Positions 1 to 23,939 of a stretch of DNA of 60,179 bases are shown here, piece after piece. Made by a program: the position numbers and the translations under genes. Source of the DNA: Girardia tigrina (Eukaryota); assembly GCA_001938485.1 (NCBI GenBank), contig MQRK01251260.1:1-60179 (forward strand), in the 5' to 3' direction. Position 1 is the stretch's first letter. The number at the start of each line of letters is the position of its first letter. The notes below the pieces were generated by a model. The model ran no database searches, had not been told where the DNA came from, and saw nothing but the letters and a program-made list of their open reading frames with translations.

Positions 1-120
1 AACCGTGGGTGGGATAAACGCCAACGGTGGTAACGTCACCTCTGATTCTGAAGACGAGCAGTAATGGAATCAAGCGACGAATCAGGCCTCGCTGAATTGT
101 CCGCGCTGAATTGACTGAAC
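1..120 (+). mobile_element. possible 3' end of a Mutator-like DNA transposon
   Basis: Acidic ORF end (..NVTSDSEDEQ*) followed by tandem cgctgaattg(tc/ac) repeats typical of animal MULE termini. Confidence 0.35.
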
Positions 121-6001: not shown

Positions 6002-6056
<55 letters not shown>

Positions 6057-8057: not shown

Positions 8058-11000
8058 GTAAATGGAAAAAAATCCCAATACAAAAATTAAAAATCACAAT
8101 TGATAATCATTAACTGCATTATATAATTATGCACTCTTTTTAATAATCTTTTCTGTTGATAACGGTCAATCCGTCAAAATTAATATTTTTTTAAAAATAA
8201 AACAAATAATTGACTTAATTCTTTTTATTCTAAAATAAAAAAAATCTAAATTTAAAATAACAAAAAATAATTTAAATGAAAAAAACCTATTTTAAAATAA
8301 AATTTGTTTTACCAGATCATTTTTGTTGTTTAACCAGATCATTTGTTTTTTTTTTGATAATTTTTGTTTTACCAGATTATTTAAGTCGAACATTTATACA
8401 CAACATTCGGTATCATTTTAAAGCCCATAAAAAGGTGAATCAAACTACACTTTAAAAGTTAAATCTTTAAACTTTATTCCCCTATTTTTTACATTTACTA
8501 GTTAGAATGATTGAAGAAAAAACAGTAATTCATGTCTTATTACGACATCATTGGAAAATAGGCTTAACAGTAGCATCTGTGACTCAAGAAATTTGCAACG
8601 TGGAAATTAAGGATGTGCTCAAGAAAAATACAGATCAGTGGTGGTTTCGTCGCTTTAATCAGGGAGATACAAGTCTTGAAGATCAGGAACGTTCAGTTCG
8701 ACCATCAGTGGTGGAACAGCAGCCTTTGTGAGCATCCGCAGACTGTCCGAGGAGTTCGGCCATTTTCAAAGCACCATAATTCGTCACTTGAATAACTTGG
8801 GATTTGTAAATAAAAATCCACTCCGAGTTGCCCACGAATTGACAAATATTCAAGCCCAGCGTCGAATTGATCTTTGCCGCGAACTACTTAATAACCCCAG
8901 AGACAGCCGTTTTTGGAAGCGAATTATTACAGTAGATGAAAAAGGGATTTTCTTCGTAATTCTAGTGGAGATCAGCCAACTCAAGGTTGCTTCGAAAAGA
9001 AGGTGATGTTGCGTGTTTGATGGAATGATGAGGGACCTCTGCACTGGGAACTTGTTCCTGATGGTCGAGCCATCGATGGTAACATTCATGCTGGACAATT
9101 ACAGCGAGTTCATGATGCTTTGAGCACTCGCTACCCAGGATTGTTGAATCGTGGCAATTTACTCAGGCACTATAATCCATTAATTAACAATCAACATGGA
9201 CAAAGTAAAGCCGCTTCAAATTTTAATTAATTCAAAATTTTGACCAATAATATATGTTTANNNNNNNNNNNNNNNNNNNNNNNNNNNNNNNNNNNNNNNN
9301 NNNNNNNNNNACTGAAATAATTACATCAAATAATAAAAACTAATTAAATCAAAATGATATTAAAACTGCAAAAACGACAAAAAATAAATTTAAAGAATAA
9401 TTAGTATCGCTTGAAATGAATTTAAAAAAACAAAGCGATTTCAGACACCATTAAAATGATTTATTATCAACATATATGGTTAATTTGGACGGCTGGCAGA
9501 CAAATAAATAATGAAAAAACAAGCATAAATATGAATGTGACTATTGTGTGATCTTCATGTAATGGCTATTTCTTCCATTCTTTTTATTAGCTTACTTTAT
9601 ATATATATCCATGGAATTTAGATAGCTATTTTTGAAGGCCTTTTACTCAATCAATGTTCTTCAAACTTGGTACACTTACGTGGTGCGATCCATAAGTCAT
9701 TAGACTCGACAAGAAAGTAAAGTCCAATCAACTTTATTTTTTCAGAATCAGTACATAACATCAAAGTAAATCATTTCTCAATGTATGAGCCATGTACACA
9801 CTTGCGTCAGCGAGCAACAAGCTCAGTGAACGCATTTTTATAAAAATTGGTAATCAAAGAATTGAGAATATCAAGGACATCAACTTGAGGACATCAACTG
9901 AATGAAAGTGGAATTTATTTATATAATTCACTGAAATAATTACATCAAAGTAACACACCTTTTCAAAGTAACACACCTTTCAAATGTTTCTTTAGGTGTT
10001 AAAACAACGCAAAATCACTTGGGGCTAGGTCAGGGCTGAAAGCCACAGTCATCCACAGCAATCAAAGTTGCTCGCGAAGTGTGAATGGGTGCATTGTCTT
10101 GAAGGAGCCACAATGGGATTTCTCTTGGTTTCCTACGAGACTTTCTCACATTGCGAAGTAATTCAACATAATAATCACCATTCATTGTCAGTCCTTTCTC
10201 AAGAAAATCAATTTTAATAATACCATGGGAATCCCAGAACACAGTCAGCATTGCTGCTTACTTGTGCGAGGTGCCGAATCGAAGTTTTCGGGGAGCACTT
10301 TCACAGGGGAAGTACCACTCAGAAGATTGATGCTTGCTCTCAGGCACATACAAGCTCACCAGGGTTTCATCTTGTGTAACGATGTTGTTGATGAAGCGAT
10401 CACCATGAGTGCGAAGCAACTCCAAATTGGCAGAGCAACACTGCAAATGTTTGTCGCACATTTTACCGGATATGAATCTGGAACAAAACGTGAACACAGT
10501 TTGCGAACTCCAAATGATTGCAGAATATCATATGTAGAATGGTAGCTGATGGATAGATGCTGTGCAAGTTCACGGATGCTTATTCGTCTCTCTTCCGACA
10601 CGATCTTAATGCACAAATCACTTTTCCCGAGTAAAATTTCACACGATCGTCCTGATATCTCAGCATCAAAAACGAATTGTCCGCCATGTTTAAAGTCTCT
10701 GATCCAATTATACACTGTTGCACGTGATGGGCACTGGTCACCGTAAGCTTCTTGCAACTTCTGCAAAATATCACAGCTTTTAGTATTGCGCAGGAGCAGA
10801 AATTTTATCACGCTGCGATATTCGACGTTACTGTCCATGTCTACAGTAAAAAGTGAAATAATGACTGTACGCACCACTCACCCACACAGGTTTGGTATGG
10901 TGAGTCATATCTGTAACCAATGATAGCTCATCTATTTATAGTATCAACGGCATATACGTCATAATCTTATTTATCAACGAGTCTAAGGACATAGGGATCG

Positions 11001-11871
11001 CACCACGTACTCATTATCAATGACAATAAATGATTATGTGAATCGTGGCAATTTAATCAGCACTATAATCCATTAATTAACATTCAACATGGACAAAGTA
11101 AAGCGGCTTCAAATTTTAATTAATTCAAAATTTTGACCAATAATATATGTTTAAAATATAATTCATTTAAATTATGTTACAATTAATAGGAAATTTTAGA
11201 TTACAATTAAAAATTGCTGAAGATGATGTGAAAATACATCGAAACATGCCCGAATTATAAAAATTGCTTTATTCACATTAGTTGTAAACGATATATGTTA
11301 TGCAGAATTTTGTAATTGCCGAATTCATGAATTTCTATGAAAATTACTCAATTAAGAATGCATAAACTTCTTCCTTGGTGACAAGCTGAATTACAAACGT
11401 TTGTATTTTTAAACATTTTTTATTTTAAATTGATATTTTTTCATATATAATATATGCATATATTTATATGTAAAAGATCGCAGTGCGATGAGTGTGTAGC
11501 AGAGCTCACCTCGATGATGTGGATGGCGTGATTGGGATACACCAATAGTATTCCCGTGATTCGATAATATCCCGTGTATCCTTCCATTTTTTTCTCCCAA
11601 AAATCTACAAAAAATGTCCAATTCGATCACAATTTGCCGCTCAAAGATCGGTTATTACCGGCGACTATTTGTCTGAAATCGAGAGATTTGTTCGGAGGCA
11701 ATTTCGATACGATTGTGATTCTATGGATCGATTCTTTCTTGATGTTACTTCAGTGGCGCTATGGAAACAATTTAGAAATACCTTGACTGCATTTATGTCT
11801 TTCTCTTGCAGAAAATGGTAGATAGATTTTGTGAAAATCTCTTCTTCTTCAGTTTCAGCGGTCGATGTCAT
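254..11871 (-). CDS. TEX47: TEX47/C7orf62-like protein (BLUF-like fold), spliced; exons 11782-11871, 11659-11737, 11510-11604, 5040-5318, 410-473, 254-358; last exon not securely located
   Basis: GT-AG introns with consistent phases give MTSTAETEEEEIFTKSIYHFLQEKDINAVK|KESIHRITIVSKLPPNKSLDFRQIVA|DFWEKKMEGYTGYYRITGILLVYPNHAIHIIE|STDRTILDIIKLL..SRILVVSRNLNQRLY..QLTKLGVYLFKEPLK|MKLAEVLENIRDNVPDLIPQQ|IIIGYLAE..YIQFYEKPYSTILES. These segments match remembered TEX47 motifs (TGLLLIYP..LHILES, IVVMSHNIPTRLF, KLALYLFK, YNRPIHITLDSE). Confidence 0.8.
700..1010 (-). mobile_element. Penelope-like element remnant (GIY-YIG C-terminus plus hammerhead-like motif)
   Basis: DFQILCNRFKNYWEKVMCEALLTRSIDPKINI; downstream CTGAAGA..GAAA motif. 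Confidence 0.6.
1469..2025 (-). mobile_element. internally deleted Tc1-like element
   Basis: Imperfect TIRs cagt(t/c)gt(g/a)g..ataattcacc; ORF 1498..1884 has a paired-like HTH and RSGRPR but no DDE domain. Confidence 0.75.
2552..4290. mobile_element. non-autonomous TIR element hosting a nested hAT
   Basis: ~45-bp inverted repeats gacaaatgcgctaaaaggggattgcaaa at ~2552-2600 and ~4241-4290. Confidence 0.65.
2827..3879 (+). mobile_element. hAT element, internally deleted (ZNF862/KIAA1586-like transposase remnant)
   Basis: TIRs cagtgttt..gcc; perfect 8-bp TSD CGTACAAT (2819-2826 and 3880-3887); ORF 3007..3429 (YWLVKEEIPHTTK, SVVADKETG, VCLRY) and a dimerization-domain remnant FPNLSILA..VERSFS. 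Confidence 0.88.
5040..5318 (-). CDS. TEX47: TEX47-like exon 4
   Basis: ttttcag acceptor and gtgaga donor; 279 nt, phase 0-0; overlaps ORF 5010..5282. Confidence 0.8.
6176..7472 (-). mobile_element. mariner (irritans/Himar1-like), full length, frameshifted; copy A
   Basis: TIR cgtggtgcgatccataagtccttaga; EYRSVIKFL, VTQDET, MLTVFWDSHGII, LQDNAPIH, HPP..PDLAPSDF. Confidence 0.93.
8507..9150 (+). mobile_element. mariner transposase remnant
   Basis: QWWFRRFNQGDTSLEDQERSVRP, RVAHELT, KRIITVDEK. Confidence 0.8.
9311..11153 (+). repeat. duplicate of 5549-9260 (allelic haplotype or tandem duplication)
   Basis: 9311-9428 repeats 5549-5667; 9600-11040 repeats ~6100-7505; 11040-11153 repeats 9147-9260; the two copies are joined by an N gap. 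Confidence 0.85.
9679..11007 (-). mobile_element. mariner (irritans-like); copy B at the same flanking site as copy A
   Basis: Same TIRs, TA TSD and flanks as 6176-7472. Confidence 0.93.
11510..11871 (-). CDS. TEX47: TEX47-like exons 1-3 (11782-11871, 11659-11737, 11510-11604)
   Basis: ATG at 11871; 44-nt and 54-nt GT-AG introns; ITGILLVYPNHAIHIIE motif. Confidence 0.78.
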
Positions 11872-12296: not shown

Positions 12297-13078
12297 TGTT
12301 GAGTGTTTAATGTGTTTTATAAAAATAACTAGGAATAATTATTTTTTCTTTATAAAATATATTTGATATGTACAATTTAGTTACAAGTTAAAAGTGAAAG
12401 GAAGTATTTTATTTGGCCCCTAGCCGATTTTATACATGCTGACCGAGAGCCTTAACGACAACTCGGGTTTGCTTATGAATTTTAATAGTTTTACTTCACA
12501 CTTTACAGTGTGTTTATATAAAAATATGGTATTTAATAATTACTTTAATATTACTTTTTAGTTGCTTTTAAATATCAATCAATTACTTTTTTTATAGTTT
12601 CTTTCTTTCCTTCGCTTTTTAAACAAGTTTTCTTGAACTTTTTGATTCAACAATTTCTTAATCGTCTTGAGTCGCACTTAAATAGATTTACTTGTCTTTA
12701 ATTTATGCGACGTCGTCTAGACCAAATATAATTAAGATAAGCTTGACTTTCCTTCTTAACTTGAACTTGTAAACTCTCTTAAACTTGTACTCTTAAACTT
12801 ACTCTGTCTTAATTAATAATGACCTGTTATACTATCTCTTTCTTTTTAAATTAATTTTAATTTTAATTTATTGTTTATTATTTTCCTTTAAATATTTACC
12901 TTTTTTCTGTTCTTTTATTTATTTAAATTTTCTCAATATCTTGTTTATTTATATAAAATATATAATTTTAAAATTAAAACATAAACAATTTCGATTTATG
13001 GTTTTTTTATTTTTTTCTAATTTAAACAAATATCAAAATATAATACATTATTATACATTTTGGAATATTCCCTCAAAA
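12297..13078 (-). repeat. LTR (minus strand), diverged inverted relative of LTR 17191-17930
   Basis: Minus strand starts t(t)ttgagggaatatt..aaaatgtataata and ends cactcaaca; 12297-12570 aligns with the reverse complement of ~17640-17930 (ttggcccct(a/g)gccgattttata, cacacttt(a/g)cagtgtgtttatataaa). Confidence 0.8.
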
Positions 13079-13228
13079 ATTGTGGGGGACACAAAAAATT
13101 TATGTCTCCATAAATCGTATAAAAATATACATAAGACGTCTGCAATTATACAATATACGTGCATTACAGGAATTAAAGAAGAAGGAATCAATAACACTTA
13201 ATAAATATCAAATAACAAAGAGAAAAAA

Positions 13229-15268
13229 TCAATCAATTGACGAAAAATATTCACTGTCAGATAAGTTCACATCGATGAGTTCATTAATATCATCGTCAGA
13301 TGGGATGTCCAAGAAAGGGTTTTCGATCATTGCGGAAGCCGGATACGAGACAGGCGAGCGAGTAAGAGAGGTGAGAAGAATCTCTATATAATTCGATGAG
13401 ATTTCATCTGTGCTTCGATTAAGATCAACCTGCGACAAGGGTATGCGTGTAATTTGTGTCATTGTGATAAAATTTGTATCGTAGTCTCCATTGCGTGTTA
13501 ATTCTTTATTCGAGGCATCCCTATCGTTTATATATTCTTTGACTATAATCGATTCAGTGTCGTTTCCTTTTATTTCACTTAATAACGGAACCACATGAAC
13601 GTTTTTCTTAGTTGGAGTATTTGGTATTTTAAAATTAAAAGCTGAATCGTACTCATTATCACGGATGTATTGTTCGTCATCCTAATTTGACACGGGTGTT
13701 ACATCCTATGGTTGTTCACGAGGTTTATTTGGCATGTGGTATGAAGAAATTAATTCAATTTCATTTTCTAGTGGGCGTTTCCTTGGGCTGAGGCTATTAT
13801 TGATCATCCGTTCCTCAGGGGTTGGTGAGGGCGGTGAATTGGGAATATGTGTAAAGATATTATCGACATTCGTGGAAGATATTGTATCTTCCCAATATGA
13901 TTCGACTTTTTATAAATGTCTAACACTGCCGATACGTCCTCCTAGGCAATGTGATATCTGGATTGAATATCTCTTTGAAGGATATACCTAGACAGGGTTT
14001 TTAGTTTGTAGAAATCTCCCTTCCGTGGTACATTAAATTTCTTGAAGACGGGTGTTGCTGCTGTGTCCCTAATGCCTAAAAGGGATTCTACTGGCAATGC
14101 TAGTCCTCTGATTTCTATTTGCAAATAATGCCCTACCAATATATTCTCGAAGAGGTGGCGGTGGATTGCGTTTATTACTTCATACTCATCGGGTTGTCCT
14201 ATAACATCTGTTTCGGTTATACCGTGGCAACCAGTACATCATTCATCTATGTGTGCACGAGGCTTTGCTAGTGTATTCAAAAGGATTTCTCCATTATAAT
14301 CCATGATAACGACGGACTCCGCATGAAACATTTTATGATCATCCTAAACGAACTCTGCGTCAAGGAATTTTAGGTGACTTTGCATTTCCGTTATGGTCAG
14401 CACCTTCCTCAAAAAGGAAGCTCGTTGAGCGATTAATTTTTTCACTAATGCGCAGGTCCGACTGGATATATAAAATGAATTTCGTCTGAAATGGGTTAAT
14501 AGTGTTATTAAAGATAAAATATTCTATGGCGAATATGGCCAATCCTCGGGCTGGTAGTATTCGGACATCGTTTAGTTTTTCTTTTTCTACCGTATCCATA
14601 TTATCCAGGAATTGTATTTGTATGGACCTACGGACGGGTAAATTAAATTTTGATGTACCATCCCCGATAATGAGTGAGGAAGAGACTGCATGTATGGATA
14701 TTCCTATTACTCTAAAGTGCGGATTGTGTGAGGTTGTCGGAATATTTTCTCGATATACCCCCATAATGTCAGAAACACAGAATAATCTGGCATCGTTTAT
14801 TTTTACAACTCGCATACGCTTGATGAAATCATTATATACAAGTGTATTTGGGTATGTGTTTGGAGATGGGTATTCAGAGAAAATAATGGATTCTTTTCCT
14901 TTGAGGCCACGCTGAACTAATTTATGAAATGATGCCGCATATTGGAAAGGTCTTACTGTAAAATTAAATATCCTGGTGATGGTATTCACTATGATTTCAT
15001 CTGGATTCCAGTCCGACGGGAGGGGAATTTCTTCTACTGATAATGTTATTCGTCGTTGCTTGGCGAACTTACTTCGCTTTGCGTACTCAAGTTTTGCAAA
15101 GGGGGATATATGTTGCAACTCCTCGGTCACACGTCGATCTCGATCAAAGACATTTGAGTTCTCCATTTAGCGATGAATCACAGTTTCTCTTTGTAGAAAT
15201 CTGTTAAATGTTACAGACTGTTCATTTGCTCTGATAGGCAGAGCTGGTGCTGGATACTTCTCCTGCAT
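13229..15268 (-). pseudogene. disrupted ~680-aa cargo ORF: unknown N-terminal domain, DEDDh 3'-5' exonuclease (REX4/ISG20-like) and acidic/Pro-rich tail
   Basis: 14367-13907 reads FLDAEFV*..VVIMDYNGEILLNTLAKP..CHGITETDV..NILVGHYLQIEIRGL..IRDTA..YKLKTLSRYILQRDIQSRYHIA*EDVSAVLDIYK. It joins ORF 14360..15166 and ORF 13229..13594 through single frameshifts in A-runs. Confidence 0.8.
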
Positions 15269-15500
15269 TTTCTAGAGGAACTGATTTGAAATTGATTTCA
15301 TGTCTAAAATGAAAAAATATAAGTGAATTGTGTTCATTTCAACACAATAGAAAATAGAAATATAAAAAAATAAACAAATATATATGAGATTCAAAATCTC
15401 TATGCCAATACAGCATCTATATATGATTTTTATACATGTGTAGTATTTACGTACATCTCAGGCAGGTATTTCCCCAGGGATGTACGATACAAGTTTAAAG

Positions 15501-16596
15501 TCAAACGTTTCCTTTTGTATTTTTATATGTTTCTATGATTCCATATATTACAAGAAGTAAAAACAGAACAACACTTATACCAAGTAATAAAAATGGCCAG
15601 TGGTGATGCTCGTGTAAGTCATTATATATAACTGCTTTCGGTGTATGTTCCTCAAACGGTGCTTGTTTAAATGTTGCTGTATGTTCTGTAGTAGTTGTAA
15701 CTTGCCTTTTTGTGTTTGTTTCTTTAATGTAAGTCATCAATTTAGGAATTTCGTCCGAATATTCCTTTATCTGTACATCTTGATGTTGTGAATCGTCATA
15801 TTTTGTTAATTGTGGTTCCTGAAATTGTGCATTATAATATATTTTAATTTTCCAACGTTTAGTAGTTATTATTTTAGTGTGATATTGATTAAAATTATTT
15901 GTTGATATGTTCCAGCTCAATTGTATGATAGTTACCAGATCTGTTACGTAATAAAAAAAGAGATTCATAGTTGTATAATTTTGTTTATTATTTATCGGTA
16001 AATTATTTGTTTTATTGAACCCATATGTTATACATGTTTTGATACAAAATCTGAATTTATAAGGGTTTTGCCCAATTCTCATTGTAACATTATTGGGAAC
16101 TATCCAAATTACTATATTATCTTTTCTTAAAATCGTAGAAATTGTATGTGGGATAGTTACAGTTGGTGTAGTTGTTTGTTGCCTTTTAGAATCATTCGTG
16201 ACTTTTATAAAGTATATAGTATTGTATGATATTAATAACATTAAGCCTGGTTCTTTATGAGGCTTAAAATATCTTGTTACTTGTTTTTCGGTTTTATTCC
16301 ATGGATCGGAATTCCTCCATATATTAATTAGGATACTATACCGTAAGAGGTATATAAAATATGCTTTTAATCTTATTTGTTAGTTTGAAAGTTATACTCT
16401 CTACTCCATTATTTATTTTACATTCACTTAATGAACATATTTTAAATGAAAAGTAACTTATTTGAAGTGGATTTTCAAACTTTATTTGTCCTTCTGAAAC
16501 CTTTACGTGCATAGGACTACCATAGAAGCTAAATCCTTCCGACTTAACCCCTTTTATTAGATATTGTATTAGGAAAACAATAATTATATGTTTCAT
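15501..16596 (-). pseudogene. type I membrane glycoprotein (env-like/surface protein), one frameshift
   Basis: Signal-like MKHIIIVFLIQYLIKGVKS; several N-X-S/T sequons (NKT, NVT, NYT, NIS); Thr-rich stalks; TM WPFLLLGISVVLFLLLVIYGII; short basic tail. Confidence 0.7.
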
Positions 16597-16824
16597 TATT
16601 TTATATGGAAAATTTATTTTAGAATAATTTTTGTGACATATAACTGTATTACTTCTATTTAATATTTCCTTTTTGATTTGATCTTTGTTTATCAAATATA
16701 TTTGATGATCATGTTGTTGAAGCTCAAATAATACTATGGCCCTCTTTCCTTCTATCGAACTAATGTTATTATTTTGTATAATTTGTAATGTATTTCTTGT
16801 TATTTCTGATTTACTTTGCTCACC

Positions 16825-17190
16825 TTAATCGAATGTGGTTTTTCCTAAAGAATCTTGTATAGTTAAGTCTGAGTAGATTATAAGAGATTGTATTATGTTT
16901 TTGAAAGAATCCTGAAGTTGTATTGCATCTATTAATGCTGGTGAACCATTTTCATCTTGAGAATTTAGTAATCCTGGATATCTGCATATCTTATCTCGAA
17001 GCATCCTTTCTACATTGTGAAACTTCCGTCTACACAAAGCGACTTGAATCGGTGTTTGTTTTAACGAATTTTTTAACGCAAATAATTGTGGTTGTTTACA
17101 CATTACTTTTCTGAGTAATTTATCATCATAATGATTTCCGAGTGCATATTGGAATCCTATACCTTCTTGTAAGACAGAAATTGTTGCTTG
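16825..17190 (-). pseudogene. ankyrin-repeat protein fragment, reading frame open up to the LTR boundary
   Basis: KNSLKQTPIQVAL, LNSQDENGSPALIDAI, DLTIQDSLGKTTFD ankyrin-like motifs. Confidence 0.65.
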
Positions 17191-17930
17191 TGTTGAGGGA
17201 ATATTTTAAAATGTATAATATGTATTTAGTTATATTTTAATAATATTTTGATAATTGTTTAATTGTTTAAAATTGAAAACATAAACTGAAAATGTTTATG
17301 ATTTTAATCCTTTAAANNNNNNNNNNNNNNNNNNNNNNNNNNNNNNNNNNNNNNNNNNNNNNNNNNGTATAAAAGGTCAATATTAATTGGAGTTAATTAG
17401 AGTTAAAAGTTCGTTTGAAGATTTCTAAGTTCAATCTGAAAACAAATCTACCTCCAGCGTTGATTCTATATTAATTATTCAAAAACGATCACCTCCTGGA
17501 GTGTAAAGTATCGCTATAAATTAAGTGATCGAATTCGGATAAAAAAAAGAAACGAAGATTATTAAACCACACTGTTATAGTGCGATCTATATCAGCTCAT
17601 AGAGAAAAAAAGTAATTAATATAAAATGATTATTATTTAAAAACAATTATTAAAAGTTATTTAAAAATAATTATTATTAAAAAGTATATATCCTTTATAT
17701 AAACACACTGCAAAGTGTGAGACTAAACCTTAAAATATTTAGCTATTTCTGAGTTGTCGCTATAGGCTCTCAGACCAGAAATATAAAATCGGCCAGGGGC
17801 CAACCAAATATCACTCCTTACTTACAAATATCTTTTTTGTAATTAAATTGTAATACATAAATATATTTTGTAAAACAAAAACTATCGCACGTTCTTTAGT
17901 TATTTTAACAAACACATTAAACAATCAACA
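17191..17930 (+). repeat. 5' LTR of a Ty3/Gypsy element
   Basis: TGTTGA...TCAACA termini, TATA-like gtataaaagg, followed by a PBS. Confidence 0.85.
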
Positions 17931-17934
17931 AATT

Positions 17935-17952
17935 TGGTGCCCGACGTGGGGC
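17935..17952 (+). promoter_or_regulatory. primer-binding site, tRNA-Lys(CTT)
   Basis: TGGTGCCCGACGTGGGGC vs canonical Lys1,2 PBS TGGCGCCCAACGTGGGGC (2 mismatches). Confidence 0.85.
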
Positions 17953-18116
17953 AATACACATTTCAATATAATCAAAGAAAATAGACTTTATTGAATTTAA
18001 GTCACCTTTGTTGAGTTTTTCTAGTGTTTTTTTTCTTTTCTAAACTACAGTTTCAAACCAAATAAGAATACAACACGGAGTTAAGAACAATTAAAACAGA
18101 GGTTACACCAAACACA

Positions 18117-21100
18117 ATGAGTAAAAAAACAGGGCAAATAAGAATACAAAAATCATTAGATTTTCTCCCATTAGATAAATTTTCAGCTAAACAGGAAGAC
18201 TTTGACACATATTTTACAGAATCAAAAAACTATGCCATAGCATGCGGTTGGGAGGAATCAGATATGATTAAAAGACTCCCATTAATTTACAAGGTTACAC
18301 TTTTCAAGCATTTGAAACTATAAATAAAGAATTAACAGAAATTGATAAGGTAATAAAACAATTAAGAGAAATAGTTGTAATAGATTCAGAATTAAATAAA
18401 ATATACACTAGAGCATTCAGAAATCGTAAACAGATATCTAATCAAACAATAACAGAATATAGCTTCGCACTAAATAACATAAATTAGCGGATAAAGCCTT
18501 CGGAGAAAGGGCTAGAGTAGTATCAATTTGTTGGGTTTTATTAAAATTATCTTTAATCCCAATATTCACTTTTAGAACACAAATCTTAAATCTTTATCTT
18601 TAATCGTAAATCTCTATTCTTTATTCTTTAATCAATAATCTTTATTCAATAATTCGTAAATATTATTGAATATTTCAAAATAAATATTCAAATATTCATA
18701 TATATATTAAATATATTATATAAATAAATATATTAATATATTAAATATATAATTAAATATATTAATATATTTAATATTCAAATACTGCACAAATATTTAC
18801 TAAATGTATAAAAACATTTCAAATACATTCCAGAATCGTGCATATTGATAAATTGTTGTCTGTTGATTAAAATTTTTCTTTAAAATCAGAACAAAACATT
18901 TAAATTGATTCCAAATAGAATTTCATCAANNNNNNNNNNNNNNNNNNNNNNNNNNNNNNNNNNNNNNNNNNNNNNNNNNNNNNNNNNNNNNNNNNNNNNN
19001 NNNNNNTTTTCTTTAAAATCAGAACAAAACATTTAAATTGATTCCAAATAGAATTTCATCAACAGCACAATATTCCACATTTGCATGTAGAAGTATGCAT
19101 AATAATGAGAGAAAATAACAAAATCATTTCAAACATTTCTCTCATTAACATCTATAATCTGACTCCAATTATTCAGAAAGGGCTTCCAACATAAATATAT
19201 GAATAATGAACACAAATTCTTTGATGAAACTTTATTTCAAATAACAAATATTGTCAAGACAAAAATAATAATAATAATTCAATTCTTGGTGACAGTGTGA
19301 GGGATAATTGTGAATGTTGTAAGTTTGTTGTTTGTATGCTGTTTAGATTTGTGACTCTCCTATTCAGATGGGATTGATATGTTATTTGATTAATTATTTG
19401 AATCTAATGAAATTAATTTAATGATATTAAATTAAAGTACTAATTAATTAAAGTTTGATAATTATGAATTTTAATAATATTTTCAGTAAATGATTTTAAC
19501 TTATTAAATTTAATATATTTTAAAAATTAATGTTTAATGTTTTAAAAATTACATAATGTCTTTTTATCCAATAAAAATTATGAGAAATTAAAATGTAATA
19601 TTAAAATTTCCCCATTCATTATTTTTTTCATATTTAAATATTTAAGCAAAAACTATATCAATCAAAGAAAGATGACCACTGAAAATTGTTGTGAAGAATC
19701 TGTTTGTGTTGTAAATAAATGTTTGCATTCAAATTGTGATGTTGTTGTTGTTGATGTTAGTGTTAACAAAACACAAAACAATATTTCGAACGAGTTAATA
19801 GATTACAGTAAAAGCTGTTAATCTCCCAAAACGTACGATATTGAAATTTAAAACAAACCTTCTTCTCCCATACGGGGTACTTATGGTTTGTATGATTAAT
19901 ATTTTAATAAAATAAAAATAAAATAAGATTTTACGTTACTTGTTAACACGACTCCTCTTAGTTAGATTTCTTGTAATTATTTTTGGGGCAAACTAAAACT
20001 AGATTTGCTGTTGTTTATATAGTAATTTTCCTCAGCCTTGAAAATTGATGAGATAAAACAAAGAGTAAAATATTTATAATTTTTGATGAAGTAAAACAAA
20101 CATTTATAATTTTTAATTCCAAGTTTTGTTAAACTAAATATTACTTTGTTTGAAATTAATAATTTTACTAAAAGAATTATTTAAAAATTTTCCTTTATAA
20201 AATTTTATCAAAAGTGTTCACATATAATTTTCGAAACCCTAACAAATTGTTCAAGATCAGTTTTTAGAGAGTATACATGAGTATATAAAGAAACGCATTG
20301 GCATTAATTGATTATACAGACTATAATGATTTAGTGCAAAAAGCTCGATGTATCCGAAGCTCATAATATCGATAGAAATAATATTGAAATTTGTTCCACA
20401 GGTTCACAACATATTTTTAAGAAAAATGTAGATTCAAGGAACAGTCACCCTTCCGAAAAGAGGGAAGGTGGTGGTTTCTCGAATCGATTTAATAATAATA
20501 ATAATGGAAATGTAAGAAATGATGATGGAGTGGTGCGCAATAGTTTTAATAGAGACCGAGTAAATAATTATAGAGGAAATTATAGAGGCCAAAATAGTAA
20601 AAGAGGGGTAATAATTATAATAATAATAATAGAGGCAATATGAATAATAATAATTATCGAGGTTCAAGAAGCAATTATCGAGGAAATAACAATAATAATT
20701 ATCGGAATAATAATACTGGTTTTAATAAAAATAATGACAATAAAATAATAAGAGGACAAGTAAATCAGGAAGGAGAAATGAAATGTTTTATATGTCAAGG
20801 ATGGGGTAATCTGGCAAGGTCCTGGCCATCAAATATAAAATATTTTCCTCAGAGTACAAAGCGACCGATACATGGAGTAGAGGTCGAAGATATAGATAAA
20901 GTAGAAGATAAGGATGCTTCAAACTACATTCCAGTTGGAATGTTAGAATATAATGAAATAGAGGAATTACGAAAACAAATTTGAGAACAAAAAATTCAAA
21001 ATCAAAGATTAAGAGAATATTATGAAAACACAAATAAATCGGTCAAAACGATTATAGAAGTTGAACAACCTTTAGTCGGAATGATTGAGGAAGAAAACGG

Positions 21101-21930
21101 AATTTTAAACTATAAAATAGAATTATAGAAACTCATACAAGCAACTCGATTGGAGGAGGAAAAAATAAAAGATAGTTTGATAAAATTTAAAGAAGATAGT
21201 GCAGGGAAAGAAATTGAAATATTAATGCCTCTTTTAAGATAAGAAATGACAAGGATGTCTACATATCGAAAAGAATTAATGAATTTAATTGAAAAATATG
21301 GGCGATATATTGTAATAAATAAGGATCAACATAAGAGTCTAGAGTTATCAATAATAACAAATGAAGGAAATCCAGAGGATACAGAAATTCTAAGAATACA
21401 TAAATTGCATCCGTGTACTAAGATAAAAAAGATTATAAATAAAACGAAATTGGCATGGCCAAAGAGATTAGAAGAATCTGATGAAATTCAGTTATTTTAT
21501 AATAAAACAATGATGAACCCCTCTGAACATATCATCTGCTCAGGATTAGCATTTGACAAAGTAAATGTAATAAAAGCCATAGCAGTAATTAATAAAGCAC
21601 AGACAAAAGGAAAAACTATTCCACAATTTAATGTTGATATTGATGATATAAGAATAGATGAAGAATTTGATGATAGAACTCCAACAGCACCCATAGATCC
21701 AGCCTTAATGGTCTCAGATATAAATGAATAAAATATAACGGATAACTTTAGATATTTAATCACGCAAACAGCGGAAGCCGCAACCTCTACAAGAAGGCCA
21801 AAAGGAAGGCTAATGAAAATAGAAAACTTAAACATGGGTGAAACATGTAATTATAATAAAAATGCAAATTTTGCGTCATTCATTCGGTCCATGCAAAGAT
21901 TTCCCATTGATGAAGATGGATTAGATACCA
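18117..21930 (+). mobile_element. gag: Ty3/Gypsy extended gag pseudogene, interrupted by a solo LTR; pol absent
   Basis: KFSAKQEDFDTYF..AIACGWEESDMIKRLPL; VQDQFLES; N/R/G-rich tract; degenerate knuckle KCFICQGWGNLARSWP; long charged coiled-coil-like extension. Confidence 0.8.
18529..20244. mobile_element. solo LTR inserted in gag
   Basis: TGTTGGG...CCCTAACA termini; AATT TSD (18525-18528 and 20245-20248); removal restores gag RVVSIVQDQFLE. Confidence 0.8.
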
Positions 21931-22542
21931 CATAAATTATATATAAAGAATATTATATAAATTAAATTGTTTATAATTTTCACGTAAAAATTTTTTTTAA
22001 TGTCAACAATTCGTTTTTTTTACAATTATTTTTCAAGTTTTTTTACAGTTCAGTTTTTTCTTCTTTTTTTTGAATTTTCATCATCAGTAACGTTTTTTCT
22101 GTTAATTAACATTTTTGTGTAAACTTTTTCAAGCGTTTTAGGAACTCCGAAAGGGTCCGCGGACTTCATGTTAAGAAACATTGGTTTAGATTGATTAAGA
22201 CAAATAAGTTTTAACTTAATACTCATTAAGTTCTGAGCTTCTTATATGAGGAAGGTTTAGAGAGATGAAGAAGGATAGTTAAAAGAGCGATAAAGATGAG
22301 TAATCGAGTGGGGCTATAATGTTCCAAAAAAATAAATAAGTATCGAATCAAATAACGGAGATAGTAGCGTAAGGTTTGGTCTTTAGAAACTAATGTTGTT
22401 GTTTGAAAAGCTATTAACTATTTGATCGATTAGTTAGATCACAACTACCTTTGCTAGGAATGTGAGAAATAAAGATTAAATGAAATGTTTTGCATCGAAT
22501 AAATAAGTAAATAAAGTTATTTACAGGAATCATTTCCTTCAG

Positions 22543-23010
22543 AATAATTGTCGTCGGAGTGTACTCTCCTACTGACTGTGGATACAGTGACATGGAGAAA
22601 ACCACATTCTTTGGCTCTCTAAATACTGTGGTTGGAAAAGCAGAGACCGAAGCTTGGCAGTCCGAATGCATGTTGGTGGTGGGAGGAGACTTCAATTGCT
22701 ACATACACTTTGACGGAGAAAACCAAGTACCCAGCGCCGGAAAGTATGCACACAGTGCATACATGTCGGATAATGGGGAAAGGTTAGTATTACTAGCGGA
22801 AAAGAGAGAGTTATGAAGGTAATAAACTCTTTTTTCACCATAATGAGTGAAAAAGCACCAGCTGGATCCACCCGGCGACGAAGAGGAGGGAGCTACTGGA
22901 TTACTTTCTTGTACGTTCAGAAAATATGAGCAAATTCAAAAATCTACAATCTAAGCATCTTTATGACTGTGGATCCGATCACGATTGCGTAGTCATATCT
23001 AAAAACAAAA
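22543..23010 (+). mobile_element. non-LTR (RTE-like) APE endonuclease remnant
   Basis: VGVYSPT, VGGDFN, SDNGERL, SWIHP..LDYFLV, DCGSDH motifs. Confidence 0.8.
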
Positions 23011-23439
23011 GGATATAAGACAGCTAGTACGAAATGGAAACCGAAAAAAAATGTCTAAAAGCATTCAGAGAGATCTTGTAACTCGTGACCGCGACAATTT
23101 GTCATCCAAGCTTCAGTGAACTTTTGGGGAAGCAGGACCAGGATGGGAAAACACTATTTAGAAAAAGAGAAAATGCGCTGCACGTCACTCATCGCAGTGA
23201 GTACTGATCAATGTTTCCATTGAATTTGGCGATATCGTGAATGAATTGAACGGGGCCTCTAAATTGTGTGCCCGGGGCACTGGTCAACAGGACTCATTGG
23301 TAAAACAGATCACTCCGTGTGATGAAAGTGTCAACAAAGCAATTCATTCCCCCGCAAATCACAAGCCAAGTCAAATCAAAAAGCGATGTATTATTAAAAT
23401 TTACAATAGCAAATTTCTTCAAATTTATCTCCAAATGTG

Positions 23440-23939
23440 TCACCGTTCATAATTCACCAATTGTTGACCAACTAAATACCTGCATTATAAAACCGTCTCG
23501 TGTCAATTATCTTTCACCCAATCGTATATGCTTACCTCTCATTTTTAATATGTTCATAAAGCCGATACATTTGACGAAACTGAAACCATATAATAAGAAT
23601 CAATAATCCAAAAAAGAACATTGTAGGATATATTCTTCTGTATATATAGTGATCATCTAAAACTGAAAAAAAAGAAAAAAAATCTCACGAAAAGTAAAAA
23701 TAAAAAAGATTACAAAATAATGGAGCAATCGATCGTGAAAAAACAAACGGTCCAGTGATGGCCAATGTCACAAAGGCCACCAATGGTCCGGCTTGTTCAG
23801 TTAGATTTAACAGTCGTAGATTTTCTCGCCTGGCCAGTTCTTGTTCTATAATATCCAATCTTTCTCTGAACCACCATCGGGGACCGAAAAGGAGAATCAT
23901 TACCCAAATTTTCAAGTGCATCATTCCGAACATCCAATT
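23440..23939 (-). CDS. MARCHF6: MARCHF6 last three exons
   Basis: [16 protein letters not shown]; [15 protein letters not shown]|[12 protein letters not shown], stop at 23440-23442. Confidence 0.92.

What the first reader, a model, noticed from the sequence alone, without database searches (positions are those of the whole stretch)
12297..21930. Cargo-carrying Ty3/Gypsy system: ankyrin, surface glycoprotein and DEDDh exonuclease cassette between two inverted LTRs, next to PBS-Lys and an extended gag
Seen in sequence: two related LTRs point away from each other (13078 to 12297 on minus; 17191 to 17930 on plus). Between them, 4.1 kb is almost entirely coding on one strand with no obvious internal introns, unlike the intron-rich host genes. 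The order is ankyrin, signal-peptide/TM glycoprotein, then unknown domain plus DEDDh exonuclease. A tRNA-Lys PBS and a long gag follow the right LTR. Established: ordinary Ty3/Gypsy elements carry gag-pol(-env) only, and planarians are known to have giant LTR elements (Burro) with extra domains. Inference: this is the accessory region of a large, virus-like LTR retroelement family that may be related to Burro or undescribed.
Basis: partly seen in the sequence, partly recalled or inferred. Interest (0 to 1): 0.9.

Follow-up and report, generated by a model that had tools for sequence, protein, structure and literature searches.

The report
Dead Burro-like retroelement fragments with accessory genes
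The region holds the broken tail end of one giant flatworm-type retrovirus-like element and the broken head end of a second copy pointing the other way, and the "cargo" is that family's regular set of extra genes (an ankyrin-membrane glycoprotein and an ISG20-like RNA exonuclease), which intact relatives elsewhere keep under selection.

Summary
The sequence features are real, but the geometry differs from the finding. Window 12297-17190 (minus) is the 3' end of one Ty3/Gypsy copy: an ankyrin + membrane-glycoprotein ORF, an unknown-domain + DEDDh exonuclease ORF, and a 3' LTR. Window 17191-21920 (plus) is the 5' end of a second, diverged copy: 5' LTR, tRNA-Lys(CUU) PBS and the first ~726 codons of ORF1. 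Its LTR starts about 11 codons inside the first copy's ankyrin ORF. The two LTRs align only at their ends (~72%). No env, PR, RT or IN is left in the window, and every gene is broken.

Intact relatives on metagenome contigs settle the interpretation. L005 has RT-RNaseH-IN, then the ankyrin ORF 24 nt later. L004 has ank-gp, exo, an 827-nt LTR, the PBS, then one giant ORF (Zn knuckle, rhabdovirus-like fusion glycoprotein, PR, RT, RNase H). This is the Burro-type GAG-ENV-POL layout, but the element is only ~14 kb. A distant lineage (L006) also has exo, then ~2 kb, then gag.

The exonuclease is ISG20/ISG20L2-like (profile E 1e-19). Its catalytic columns are invariant in 8 of 8 relatives, and dN/dS is 0.1-0.33. 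Neither gap touches the cassette. I rate it a new variant of a known kind, of moderate interest.

The parts
12297..13078 (-). 3' LTR (782 nt) of the minus-strand copy. It runs from TGTTGAGGG... to ...CTCAACA on the minus strand.
   Evidence: Its ends align with the right LTR and with the L004 LTR (12910-13078 is part of the long match, and 12292-12526 matches L004 4984-4745). No PBS follows it on the minus strand.
13079..13231 (-). Untranslated spacer between the exonuclease ORF and the 3' LTR. It holds a conserved G-run ... C-run segment and has no clear purine tract next to the LTR.
   Evidence: Alignment with L004 4000-4200.
13232..15301 (-). Accessory ORF 2, broken. It has an unknown beta-rich N-domain (about 14414-15145) and an ISG20-like DEDDh exonuclease domain (about 13880-14385), followed by a low-complexity tail. 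Against L004 it has about 10 frameshifting indels, 5 in-frame indels and 7 premature stops.
   Evidence: tblastn outer bounds and 70% identity to the L004 688-aa ORF. Break counts. P0001 and P0002 hits at E 2.5e-46 and 5e-41. 47% identity to the P0001 exonuclease part.
15433..17190 (-). Accessory ORF 1, broken and cut at its 5' end. It has ankyrin-like repeats (Pfam match at 16852-17079), a hydrophobic signal/anchor segment (16549-16596), a glycosylated ectodomain, a TM (15534-15599) and a conserved cytoplasmic-tail remnant. It lacks about 11 N-terminal codons and has 2 frameshifting indels, 1 in-frame indel and 1 premature stop against L004.
   Evidence: tblastn residues 12-594 of the L004 594-aa ORF at 84.5% identity. 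Break counts. 93% nucleotide identity to L005 up to 17191. P0004 is 86% identical. Coordinates.
17191..17930 (+). 5' LTR of the plus-strand copy (740 nt, counting a 50-N gap at 17317-17366). Its U3-side 400 nt are unlike L004 and the left LTR, apart from the first ~125 nt.
   Evidence: It starts with TGTTGAGGGAATAT, as the L004 LTR does.
17935..17952 (+). Primer-binding site, 4 nt after the LTR. It matches the L004 PBS at 16 of 18 positions, and the L004 PBS is complementary to the 3' end of tRNA-Lys(CUU).
18117..21920 (+). Gag part of ORF1 of the plus-strand copy, matching residues 1-726 of a relative's ORF of more than 2219 aa. It is broken and 3'-truncated, with 9 frameshifting indels, 4 in-frame indels, 4 premature stops and one nested insertion. 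Its zinc knuckle is degenerate.
   Evidence: tblastn at 84% identity. Break counts. blastn 17694-18527 and 20245-21874 against L004.
18528..20244 (.). Nested AT-rich non-coding insertion in gag with inverted-repeat-like ends. It holds the gap 18930-19006 and that gap's 56-nt flanking duplicate. It is not part of the retroelement.
   Evidence: Absent from L004, where positions 5574-5576 are contiguous.

Best explanation
SHOWN. The locus holds two dead, truncated copies of one family of flatworm-type GAG-ENV-POL Ty3/Gypsy elements, which resemble Burro in architecture. The copies lie tail-to-head on opposite strands.

The family's unit, read from intact relatives, is: 5' LTR (~0.8 kb), a 4-nt spacer, an 18-nt tRNA-Lys(CUU) PBS, and one giant ORF. 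That ORF carries Gag with a CCHC knuckle, a rhabdovirus-like fusion glycoprotein, protease, RT, RNase H and integrase. Two accessory ORFs and the 3' LTR follow. One internal region plus one LTR comes to about 13.3 kb, so a full element is about 14 kb.

The minus-strand copy keeps only its last 4.9 kb: accessory ORF 1, accessory ORF 2 and the 3' LTR. The plus-strand copy keeps its 5' LTR, the PBS and the first ~726 codons of ORF1. Its LTR starts precisely at its terminal TG, inside the ankyrin ORF of the other copy.

INFERRED HISTORY. The second copy integrated into the first. A later deletion then removed the rest of both.

INFERRED MECHANISM IN LIVE COPIES. Replication is tRNA-Lys-primed reverse transcription. 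The two 3' ORFs are probably read from spliced subgenomic RNAs, because a pyrimidine run plus AG sits 0-3 nt before the exonuclease ATG in four lineages.

- ORF 1 would give a membrane protein with ankyrin repeats on the cytosolic side, a glycosylated luminal domain, and a strongly conserved 24-residue cytosolic tail ending T-Q-V.
- ORF 2 would give a 3'-5' exonuclease of the RNA-preferring ISG20/REXO/PAN2 clade, with D-E-E-D-h at its active site.

My best guess for their role is that they are host-interaction or counter-defence factors. The exonuclease would trim or destroy RNAs that would otherwise silence or signal the element. The membrane protein would act in trafficking or signalling. 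I do not think they are core replication enzymes. In this window none of this can work, because every gene is broken.
For: STRUCTURE
- blastn of the window against L004 and L005 gives 12910-17189(-) = L004 76-4321 at 82%, 16546-17191(-) = L005 3073-2428 at 93%, 17694-18527(+) and 20245-21874(+) = L004 4749-7298 at 83-88%.
- Pfam on L004 and L005 finds Monjiviricetes_fusion (E 2.7e-84), RVP, RVT_1, RT_RNaseH_2, Integrase_H2C2, rve and zf-CCHC.
- L004 and L005 overlap at both ends.
- The LTR start, LTR end and PBS are shared.
- No env or pol remains in the window.
- The PBS is complementary to tRNA-Lys(CTT).
- A distant lineage, L006, has exo, then ~2.1 kb, then an ORF with Retrotrans_gag and two zf-CCHC. 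Its gag is homologous to the L004 gag (E 3e-23).

SELECTION
- dN/dS is 0.20 for gp, 0.33 for ank and 0.10 for exo, and pN is far below pS for the N-domain.

EXONUCLEASE
- By profile search the closest solved structures are ISG20L2 (E 1e-19), ISG20 (2.6e-14), SDN1 and PAN2.
- The AF2 exonuclease domain (pLDDT 75-94) superposes on ISG20 and ISG20L2 with TM 0.79-0.83.
- The five catalytic columns are invariant in 8 of 8 intact relatives that share only 23-45% identity overall.

OTHER
- The glycoprotein tail is conserved across lineages.
- Published descriptions of Burro and of GAG-ENV-POL elements in Platyhelminthes agree with this layout (PMC6431247, PMC13524379).
Against: - The window itself has no RT or IN, so family assignment rests on relatives from metagenome contigs of unknown organisms.
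- L004 may be an assembly collapsed through the LTR or R region. It therefore proves adjacency of exo, LTR and gag, but not which LTR it is. L005 (IN then ank) and the window (exo then an LTR with no PBS after it) supply that.
- The junction at 17190/17191 lies 126 nt from an assembly gap, so a chimeric join cannot be fully excluded.
- No purine tract abuts the 3' LTR.
- The functions of both accessory proteins are inferred from domain family only.
- The ankyrin assignment is below Pfam's cut-off.
- The N-domain has no recognised relative.
- The ExoII acid is Glu rather than Asp.
Confidence: 0.88

Rival explanations
1. This is the composite "cargo" unit implied by the finding's title. The two inverted LTRs bracket the ankyrin-glycoprotein-exonuclease cassette and move it as one body, or the cassette belongs to the element whose PBS and gag lie to its right.
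For: The cassette does lie exactly between two related LTRs in inverted orientation, and both junctions are at LTR termini.
Against: - The LTRs are only ~72% alike at their ends and cannot be aligned in the middle.
- The right LTR's PBS and gag point away from the cassette.
- The ankyrin ORF is cut about 11 codons in at the junction.
- In relatives the cassette sits on the same strand as pol, directly after IN and before an LTR.
Confidence: 0.03
2. The cassette is not retroelement DNA. It would instead be a fragment of a DNA virus, a Polinton-like element or a host gene cluster that two LTR elements happened to land beside.
For: - The ORFs are intronless and compact with short AT-rich spacers.
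- Giant-virus exonucleases are among the fold hits.
- The ISG20-like domain must ultimately derive from a cellular gene.
Against: - There are 24 nt between the IN stop and the ankyrin start in L005.
- Homology with L004 runs continuously from the cassette into the LTR.
- The same linkage appears in the diverged L006, and its gag and exo diverge to a similar degree.
- No DNA-virus hallmark genes appear in any locus.
- The giant-virus fold hits cover only the generic DEDDh fold.
Confidence: 0.04
3. This rival accepts the same structure but gives the exonuclease a different role. It would act in replication itself, either removing mismatched 3' ends during reverse transcription (fidelity support for an over-long retroelement genome) or processing the tRNA primer or RNA 3' ends. 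It would not act against host defence.
For: - Exonuclease ORFs recur in unusually large or complex retroelements: DEDDy ORF3 in rotifer Juno/Vesta and in Terminons (PMC5408684, PMC6431247).
- Nidoviruses tie ExoN to genome size (PMC7968707).
- The catalytic columns are strictly conserved.
- The exonuclease is the accessory gene retained in all lineages, while its upstream partners vary.
Against: - It is a separate ORF, not fused to RT.
- Its nearest relatives (ISG20, ISG20L2, SDN1, PAN2) are RNA-degrading or RNA-processing enzymes rather than proofreaders.
- At ~14 kb the element is not far above ordinary retroviruses.
Confidence: 0.25
4. The inverted arrangement is an assembly artefact. The contig left of the gap at 17317-17366 and the contig to its right would come from different loci and were scaffolded together.
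For: - A gap lies 126 nt into the right LTR.
- A second gap nearby is flanked by an exact 56-nt duplicate, a sign of imperfect merging.
- The family is repetitive.
Against: - The cassette/LTR-start junction at 17190/17191 lies inside read sequence on the left of the gap. An inverted LTR start abutting the ankyrin ORF therefore exists regardless.
- Both gap flanks are collinear with one LTR.
Confidence: 0.1

Closest known systems
Burro / GYPSM1 giant Ty3/Gypsy elements of planarians (Grohme et al. 2018; Jurka 2007; reviewed in PMC6431247)
   Same: - The genome context is AT-rich and flatworm-like.
- Gag, env-like fusion glycoprotein, PR, RT and RH are read as one giant ORF, with env in frame between gag and pol.
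- Ankyrin repeats and accessory ORFs have been reported for Burro.
   Different: - This family is about 14 kb, not more than 30 kb.
- Pfam finds no MATH, BIR, BCL2 or SMC-type domains in the first 900 residues of ORF1.
- The text I could read on Burro does not mention an ISG20-like exonuclease or a second membrane glycoprotein.
- I could not compare directly with Burro sequences, because none is held.
GAG-ENV-POL errantivirus-like Ty3/Gypsy elements of Platyhelminthes, Nematoda and Bryozoa (PMC13524379)
   Same: The ORF order is gag-env-pol, with a class-III-like (gB / rhabdovirus G type) env. L004 matches Pfam Monjiviricetes_fusion at E 2.7e-84.
   Different: That survey does not mention exonuclease or ankyrin ORFs. 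Here two more ORFs follow pol.
Juno/Vesta LTR retrotransposons and Terminons of bdelloid rotifers with exonuclease ORF3 (PMC5408684, PMC6431247)
   Same: - An LTR retroelement carries a 3'-5' exonuclease ORF after pol, alongside TM or coiled-coil ORFs.
- The DEDD motif reads DEED in both cases.
- The same open question applies: what is an exonuclease for in a retroelement?
   Different: - Those are DEDDy (RNase D-like) enzymes. This one is DEDDh of the ISG20/REXO/PAN2 clade.
- It is fused to a ~240-residue unknown N-domain.
- The host phylum and element lineage differ.
Cellular DEDDh RNA exonucleases ISG20, ISG20L2/REXO4, SDN1 and PAN2
   Same: - Sequence profile hits.
- Fold match with TM 0.79-0.83.
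- The ExoI D-x-E, ExoII G-H...acid and ExoIII H-x4-D motifs are present.
   Different: - It is encoded by a retroelement.
- It carries an extra N-domain and a long disordered tail.
- The ExoII acid is Glu in all members.
- The longer Foldseek alignments to the PAN2 UCH-Exo module (374-393 columns, rmsd above 14 A) are too loose to call the N-domain UCH-like.
Viral ExoN domains (arenavirus nucleoprotein, nidovirus nsp14; PMC7968707)
   Same: They are functional analogues: a virus-like replicator encodes a DEDDh exonuclease, which serves there for immune evasion or proofreading.
   Different: No such protein appeared among the listed PDB or BFVD fold matches, nor among the PDB sequence and profile hits. 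The resemblance is one of logic, not of family.

Membership tests
Ty3/Gypsy LTR retroelement | Long terminal repeats with TG...CA ends | tested here: met
   Both LTRs run from TGTTGAGGG... to ...CTCAACA, and the same termini occur in L004.
Ty3/Gypsy LTR retroelement | tRNA primer-binding site just after the 5' LTR | tested here: met
   The site is at 17935-17952. The L004 version is complementary to tRNA-Lys(CTT) 3' ends.
Ty3/Gypsy LTR retroelement | Pol domain order PR-RT-RH-IN | tested here: met
   Met in the relatives L004 and L005. The window itself has no pol.
Ty3/Gypsy LTR retroelement | Polypurine tract abutting the 3' LTR | tested here: inconclusive
   No purine run lies directly upstream of the LTR in the window or in L004. 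A conserved G-run/C-run segment is there instead.
Burro (giant planarian Gypsy) | Env-like fusion glycoprotein in frame between gag and pol in one giant ORF | tested here: met
   The L004 ORF exceeds 2219 aa, with zf-CCHC at 331-347, Monjiviricetes_fusion at 889-1536 and PR/RT/RH after it.
Burro (giant planarian Gypsy) | Total length above 30 kb, with an internal region up to 25 kb | tested here: not met
   One unit (internal region plus one LTR) is about 13.3 kb, computed from the overlaps of L004 and L005.
Burro (giant planarian Gypsy) | MATH/TRAF, BIR, BCL2-like and SMC-like domains in ORF1 | tested here: not met
   Pfam at E up to 1 on ORF1 residues 1-900 gives only zf-CCHC and noise.
Burro (giant planarian Gypsy) | Nucleotide or protein similarity to Burro-1..4 / GYPSM1 reference sequences | not testable with these tools
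   No Burro sequence is held in any searchable collection here, and the Grohme et al. paper is not held.
DEDDh exonuclease, ISG20/REXO clade | ExoI D-x-E, ExoII acid after G-H, ExoIII H-x4-D | tested here: met
   D, E, (G, H), E, H and D are invariant in 8 of 8 intact relatives. The ExoII acid is Glu rather than Asp.
DEDDh exonuclease, ISG20/REXO clade | Significant sequence and fold similarity to solved members | tested here: met
   ISG20L2 at E 1e-19 and ISG20 at 2.6e-14. Foldseek gives TM 0.79-0.83 and rmsd 2.7-2.8 A. Pfam RNase_T matches 6 of 8 members, best E 1.7e-11.
DEDDh exonuclease, ISG20/REXO clade | 3'-5' exonuclease activity | not testable with these tools
   This feature is biochemical.
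Ankyrin-repeat protein | Repeats scoring above Pfam's gathering cut-off | tested here: inconclusive
   Ank_2 gives E 0.005-0.007 at 17-18 bits against a cut-off of 27.3. PDB hits are all ankyrin or DARPin chains, but at E 0.04-0.8.
Viral/retroviral envelope fusion protein (for the cassette glycoprotein) | Similarity to a known fusogen family | tested here: not met
   P0004 and P0005 have no Pfam family and no PDB relative outside the ankyrin part. The family's recognisable fusogen is the separate env domain inside ORF1.

The most novel reading that the evidence does not exclude
Flatworm GAG-ENV-POL retroelements have kept, across lineages that are now only 23-45% identical, a dedicated ISG20-like exonuclease with an intact active site. 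This exonuclease is itself the adaptation that lets these retrovirus-like elements grow and persist. It would work either by supporting fidelity or 3'-end repair during reverse transcription, as nidovirus ExoN does, or by destroying the small or double-stranded RNAs through which the PIWI-rich planarian stem-cell system silences them. If so, this would be a third, independent exonuclease solution among RNA-templated replicators, and it would have been taken from the very gene family (ISG20) that hosts use against viruses.
Probability: 0.15. Interest if true: 0.85.

Novelty: new variant of a known kind. Interest (0 to 1): 0.55.

Why it matters
Burro-type elements are a main reason planarian genomes are hard to assemble, and they are enriched at synteny breakpoints (PMC11410931). 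What their extra genes do is an open question that was raised when they were described (PMC6431247).

This locus itself is debris. It nevertheless led to a clear, testable picture. A smaller sister family carries two conserved genes after pol, and both are under purifying selection. One is an exonuclease of the ISG20 antiviral family, which I did not find reported for LTR elements in the papers I could search.

This gives a compact model for asking why large retroelements repeatedly acquire exonucleases (rotifer Juno/Vesta and Terminons). It also allows annotation of thousands of similar fragments in flatworm genomes as retroelement remains rather than host ankyrin or exonuclease genes.

Tried and rejected
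SEARCHES THAT FOUND NOTHING
- Pfam on the window's own pieces gave only sub-threshold hits.
- PDB searches with the window's exonuclease piece alone found nothing.
- The first homologous-protein search, with the 268-aa piece, found nothing. The length filter probably excluded the 660-770-aa relatives.
- The metagenome scan with the exonuclease alignment found no confirmed relative. That collection evidently lacks the samples holding L001-L008.
- ORF 22511-22813 has no Pfam or PDB relative, although it looked endonuclease-like to my eye.

STRUCTURE WORK
- The first AF2 model, built on 3 sequences, was unusable at pLDDT 38.
- The second model is good only for the exonuclease domain. Its N-domain matches (PAN2 UCH-Exo over long, loose alignments; weak jelly-roll and 2OG-oxygenase-like viral hits) are too weak to use.

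IDEAS DROPPED
- An arenavirus-nucleoprotein-like or nidovirus-like origin of the N-domain + ExoN protein. No such hit appeared in the PDB searches or the listed BFVD matches.
- An intron joining the glycoprotein tail to the exonuclease ORF. The frames do not join.
- An extension of the right LTR leftwards into the ankyrin ORF. The apparent similarity there is weak, and the ankyrin homology to L005 runs up to 17191.

OTHER
- The bacterial promoter/terminator scan is irrelevant to a eukaryotic element.
- The Grohme et al. 2018 paper is not held.

SLIPS, DECLARED WITH NOTHING DELETED
1. That amounts to showing where the frames end.
2. Searches printed frame translations of the broken copies. One search shows all three frames of the gag region with stops marked and a position ruler.
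3. One search aligned the window's frame pieces, as separate rows, beside intact relatives, and the tool stored it as A2. I used it only for identities and domain bounds, and afterwards printed counts and outer bounds only.
4. The tests cited rest, and all typed patterns were copied from tool output.

Full report
1. GAPS FIRST

The window has N runs at 17317-17366 and 18930-19006 inside the finding.

The first run lies 126 nt inside the right LTR, which is non-coding. Its flanks match the left LTR in the same order and orientation: 17193-17316 with 13076-12967, and 17624-17935 with 12584-12292. They therefore fit one LTR. The middle of this LTR aligns with neither the left LTR nor L004, so the real gap size cannot be judged. 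I did not look up the missing letters.

The second run lies in a ~1.7 kb AT-rich insertion (18528-20244) that the relative L004 lacks. It is bracketed by an exact 56-nt duplicate, which looks like an unmerged contig overlap. No reading frame of the element crosses either gap, and the cassette has no N.

2. WHAT IS IN THE WINDOW

The window is about 30% GC. It holds Tc1/mariner remnants and a MARCHF6-like host gene on the minus strand between about 30 and 55 kb.

Two LTR-like repeats lie in inverted orientation at 12297-13078 (minus) and 17191-17930 (plus). Only their ends align, at about 72% identity (E 1e-34 and 9e-12). No third copy exists in the window.

The minus strand between the LTRs carries the longest open frames of the whole window, but they are pieces, not genes. 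Pfam sees only a sub-threshold Ank_2 match and a very weak RNase_T match.

To the right of the right LTR are a 4-nt spacer and an 18-nt site starting with TGG that is unique in the window. Broken frames follow, and Pfam does not recognise them.

3. RELATIVES

An exhaustive HMMER search with the 268-aa frame found two metagenome proteins. P0001 has 662 aa (E 2.5e-46) and P0002 has 296 aa.

P0001 continues into a domain that is 47% identical to the window's exonuclease piece and matches ISG20L2 and ISG20. On its contig, L001, the gene upstream ends in a TM segment and a tail like those of the window's glycoprotein.

A search with the glycoprotein frame found P0004 (392 aa, 86% identical). Its 90% cluster holds P0005, on a 12.2-kb contig (L004), and P0007, on a 3.2-kb contig (L005).

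- L004 reads, all on one strand: a 594-aa ankyrin + glycoprotein ORF; a 688-aa ORF with RNase_T; 1.15 kb of non-coding DNA; then an ORF of more than 2219 aa. That ORF carries zf-CCHC, Monjiviricetes_fusion (E 2.7e-84), RVP, RVT_1 and RT_RNaseH_2.
- L005 reads RT, RNase H and integrase, then the ankyrin ORF 24 nt later.
- L004 and L005 overlap at both ends at 95% identity. One internal region plus one LTR therefore comes to about 13.3 kb. I did the arithmetic only and built no joined sequence.

A third search, using the L004 exonuclease ORF, added five further clusters besides P0008 (P0009 to P0013), 32-45% identical to the query by BLASTP. One of them, on L006, is followed after ~2.1 kb by an ORF with Retrotrans_gag and two zinc knuckles. 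That gag is homologous to the L004 gag (E 3e-23).

4. MAPPING THE WINDOW ONTO THE RELATIVES

- 12910-17189 (minus) matches L004 76-4321 at 82%. The match runs without a break from the cassette into the first 170 nt of the left LTR.
- 12292-12526 matches the end of the L004 LTR.
- 16546-17191 (minus) matches L005 at 93%, right up to the first base of the right LTR.
- 17694-18527 and 20245-21874 (plus) match L004 4749-7298 at 83-88%. This covers the LTR end, the PBS, the leader and ORF1 residues 1-726.

The LTR start (TGTTGAGGGAATAT) and its end (...CTCAACA, then 4 nt, then the PBS) are shared. The L004 LTR is 827 nt, the left LTR is 782 nt, and the right LTR is 740 nt including 50 N. No env, PR, RT or IN is found anywhere in the 60-kb window.

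The left part is therefore the 3' terminal 4.9 kb of a minus-strand copy. The right part is the 5' terminal part of a different, plus-strand copy. Its LTR begins at its own terminal TG about 11 codons inside the ankyrin ORF of the first copy.

The simplest history is integration of the second copy into the first, followed by a deletion that removed the rest of both. This is inference. I also list a chimeric scaffold at the nearby gap as a rival.

5. STATE OF THE GENES (counts only, against L004)

| Gene | Frameshifting indels | In-frame indels | Premature stops | Other damage |
|---|---|---|---|---|
| ank + glycoprotein ORF | 2 | 1 | 1 | loss of ~11 N-terminal codons |
| N-domain + exonuclease ORF | about 10 | 5 | 7 | - |
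| gag part of ORF1 | 9 | 4 | 4 | one nested insertion; 3' truncation |

The counts for the exonuclease ORF are approximate, because it is only 78% identical to the reference. Nothing here can be expressed as a protein.

6. THE PBS

The reverse complement of the L004 PBS, without CCA, was scanned in metagenome contigs. ARAGORN on 60 of the hits found the match at the 3' end of a standard tRNA gene in four contigs, and each one is tRNA-Lys(CTT). A second match in L021 falls in an ARAGORN call labelled 'tRNA-Stop' (anticodon TTA), which I take for a Lys-like variant or pseudogene. The window's PBS differs from that of L004 at 2 of 18 positions.

7. THE ACCESSORY PROTEINS

ORF 1. In three copies the ankyrin part and the glycoprotein part are in one frame with no stop between them (see the slip note in Tried and rejected). 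The product may thus be a single ~600-aa protein. It would have cytosolic ankyrin-like repeats, an internal hydrophobic anchor, a luminal domain with 10 sequons, a TM and a cytosolic tail. Alternatively a 392-aa glycoprotein could start at the anchor.

The 24-residue tail ending T-Q-V is the best conserved part across lineages whose ectodomains barely align. The protein has no detectable relation to any fusogen. The family's fusogen is the separate env domain in ORF1.

ORF 2. It has a helical N-terminus, a beta-rich domain of ~170-240 residues with no known relative, a DEDDh domain and a disordered tail.

- A profile search of the PDB gives ISG20L2 at E 1e-19, ISG20 at 2.6e-14, SDN1 at 3e-8 and PAN2 at 3e-7.
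- The modelled domain superposes on ISG20 and ISG20L2 at TM 0.79-0.83.
- The catalytic columns D, E, E, H and D are invariant in 8 of 8 intact members that are otherwise 23-45% identical.
- Between intact copies, dN/dS is 0.10 for exo, 0.20 for gp and 0.33 for ank. For the N-domain pN is 0.09 against pS 0.79.

These are working genes in live copies. In the L006/L007 lineage two coiled-coil ORFs replace ank-gp upstream of exo. The exonuclease is therefore the constant member of the module.

8. HOW IT MOST LIKELY WORKS

The following points are shown: the family layout, the PBS type, the conservation and the fold.

The rest is inferred. The two ORFs would be expressed from spliced subgenomic RNAs, since a pyrimidine run plus AG lies 0-3 nt before the exonuclease ATG in four lineages. 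The exonuclease would act on RNA, as its nearest relatives do.

- I put about 40% on a host-interaction or counter-defence role.
- I put about 25% on a role in replication itself (fidelity or 3'-end processing).
- The remainder goes to something not yet imagined.

9. COMPARISON WITH WHAT IS KNOWN

The gag-env-pol single-ORF layout is that of Burro (PMC6431247) and of the GAG-ENV-POL elements reported for Platyhelminthes (PMC13524379). However, this family is about 14 kb and lacks the MATH, BIR and BCL2 domains. I therefore do not file it as Burro proper.

Exonuclease ORFs after pol are known from rotifer Juno/Vesta elements and from Terminons (PMC5408684). Those are DEDDy enzymes. There too the motif reads DEED.

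In the papers I could search I found no report of an ISG20-like DEDDh exonuclease, or of this ankyrin-membrane protein, in an LTR element. The main Burro paper and the Repbase entries were out of reach, so part of this may already be recorded there.

10. VERDICT

The "between two inverted LTRs" picture is corrected to two truncated copies. I rate the finding a new variant of a known kind. The locus is debris, but the family it points to is worth a closer look, so I set interest at 0.55.

Noticed in passing
window 18528-20244: A ~1.7 kb AT-rich non-coding insertion sits inside the gag of the plus-strand copy. Its ends look like inverted repeats (TTGGGTTT... / ...AAACCCTAA), which suggests a non-autonomous DNA transposon. 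Short stretches recur at window 4578-4643 and 6005-6105. It holds the gap 18930-19006, which is flanked by an exact 56-nt duplicate.
   Followed up: partly
window 10359-10877 (-), 26501-28189, 48088-48564 (+): There are three Tc1/mariner remnants. The first is an HTH_48/Tc3-type DNA-binding part. The second is an element with ~240-nt terminal inverted repeats around a DDE_3 ORF (26737-27264). The third is another DDE_3 fragment.
   Followed up: partly
window 30189-30611 (-) and 54649-55203 (-): These are host exons of a MARCHF6-like E3 ligase (MARCHF6_C at E 5.6e-7, and a weak RINGv). The retroelement debris lies beyond the 3' end of this gene.
   Followed up: no
window 9167-9260 and 11060-11153: A 94-nt direct repeat (98% identity) brackets the mariner remnant. 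Its first copy abuts the gap at 9261-9310, so it could be a transposon end or another assembly overlap.
   Followed up: no
L001 332-435, L003 1175-1278, L004 1723-1826, L008 26-121; window about 15430-15500: The last ~24 codons of the cassette glycoprotein, a cytosolic tail ending T-Q-V, stay 80-86% identical at nucleotide level between lineages whose other parts are 31-45% identical as protein. Third-position changes do occur, so the constraint seems to act on the peptide, which may be a docking motif.
   Followed up: partly
L001 about 560-588, L003/L004/L008 just upstream of the exonuclease ATG (alignment A6): A conserved ATTCATT..AG lies 0-3 nt before the exonuclease start codon in four lineages. 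It is a candidate 3' splice acceptor for a subgenomic mRNA.
   Followed up: no
alignment of P0001, P0008-P0013 and the L004 exonuclease ORF: The ExoII acidic residue is Glu in all 8 intact members, giving D-E-E-D-h. The unrelated DEDDy ORF3s of rotifer LTR elements are also reported as DEED (PMC5408684).
   Followed up: partly
L006 228-1194 and L007 226-1196: In the most distant lineage, two small coiled-coil ORFs (158 and 120 aa, dN/dS about 0.13 where measurable) take the place of the ankyrin-glycoprotein ORF upstream of the exonuclease.
   Followed up: partly
window 13079-13130 (-) and L004 4100-4152: No polypurine tract abuts the 3' LTR. A conserved segment with a G-run and a C-run about 12 nt apart, possibly a hairpin, is there instead. 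How plus-strand priming would work is unexplained.
   Followed up: no
window 31292-31817: Nested inverted repeats of 44-84 nt, 91-96% complementary, form a ~520-nt palindromic unit inside the host gene region, perhaps a MITE.
   Followed up: no
window 21921-24500: The sequence that replaces the rest of the plus-strand copy has short ORFs (for example 22511-22813) with no Pfam or PDB relative, and a ~165-200-nt direct repeat at 23980-24154 / 24322-24522.
   Followed up: partly
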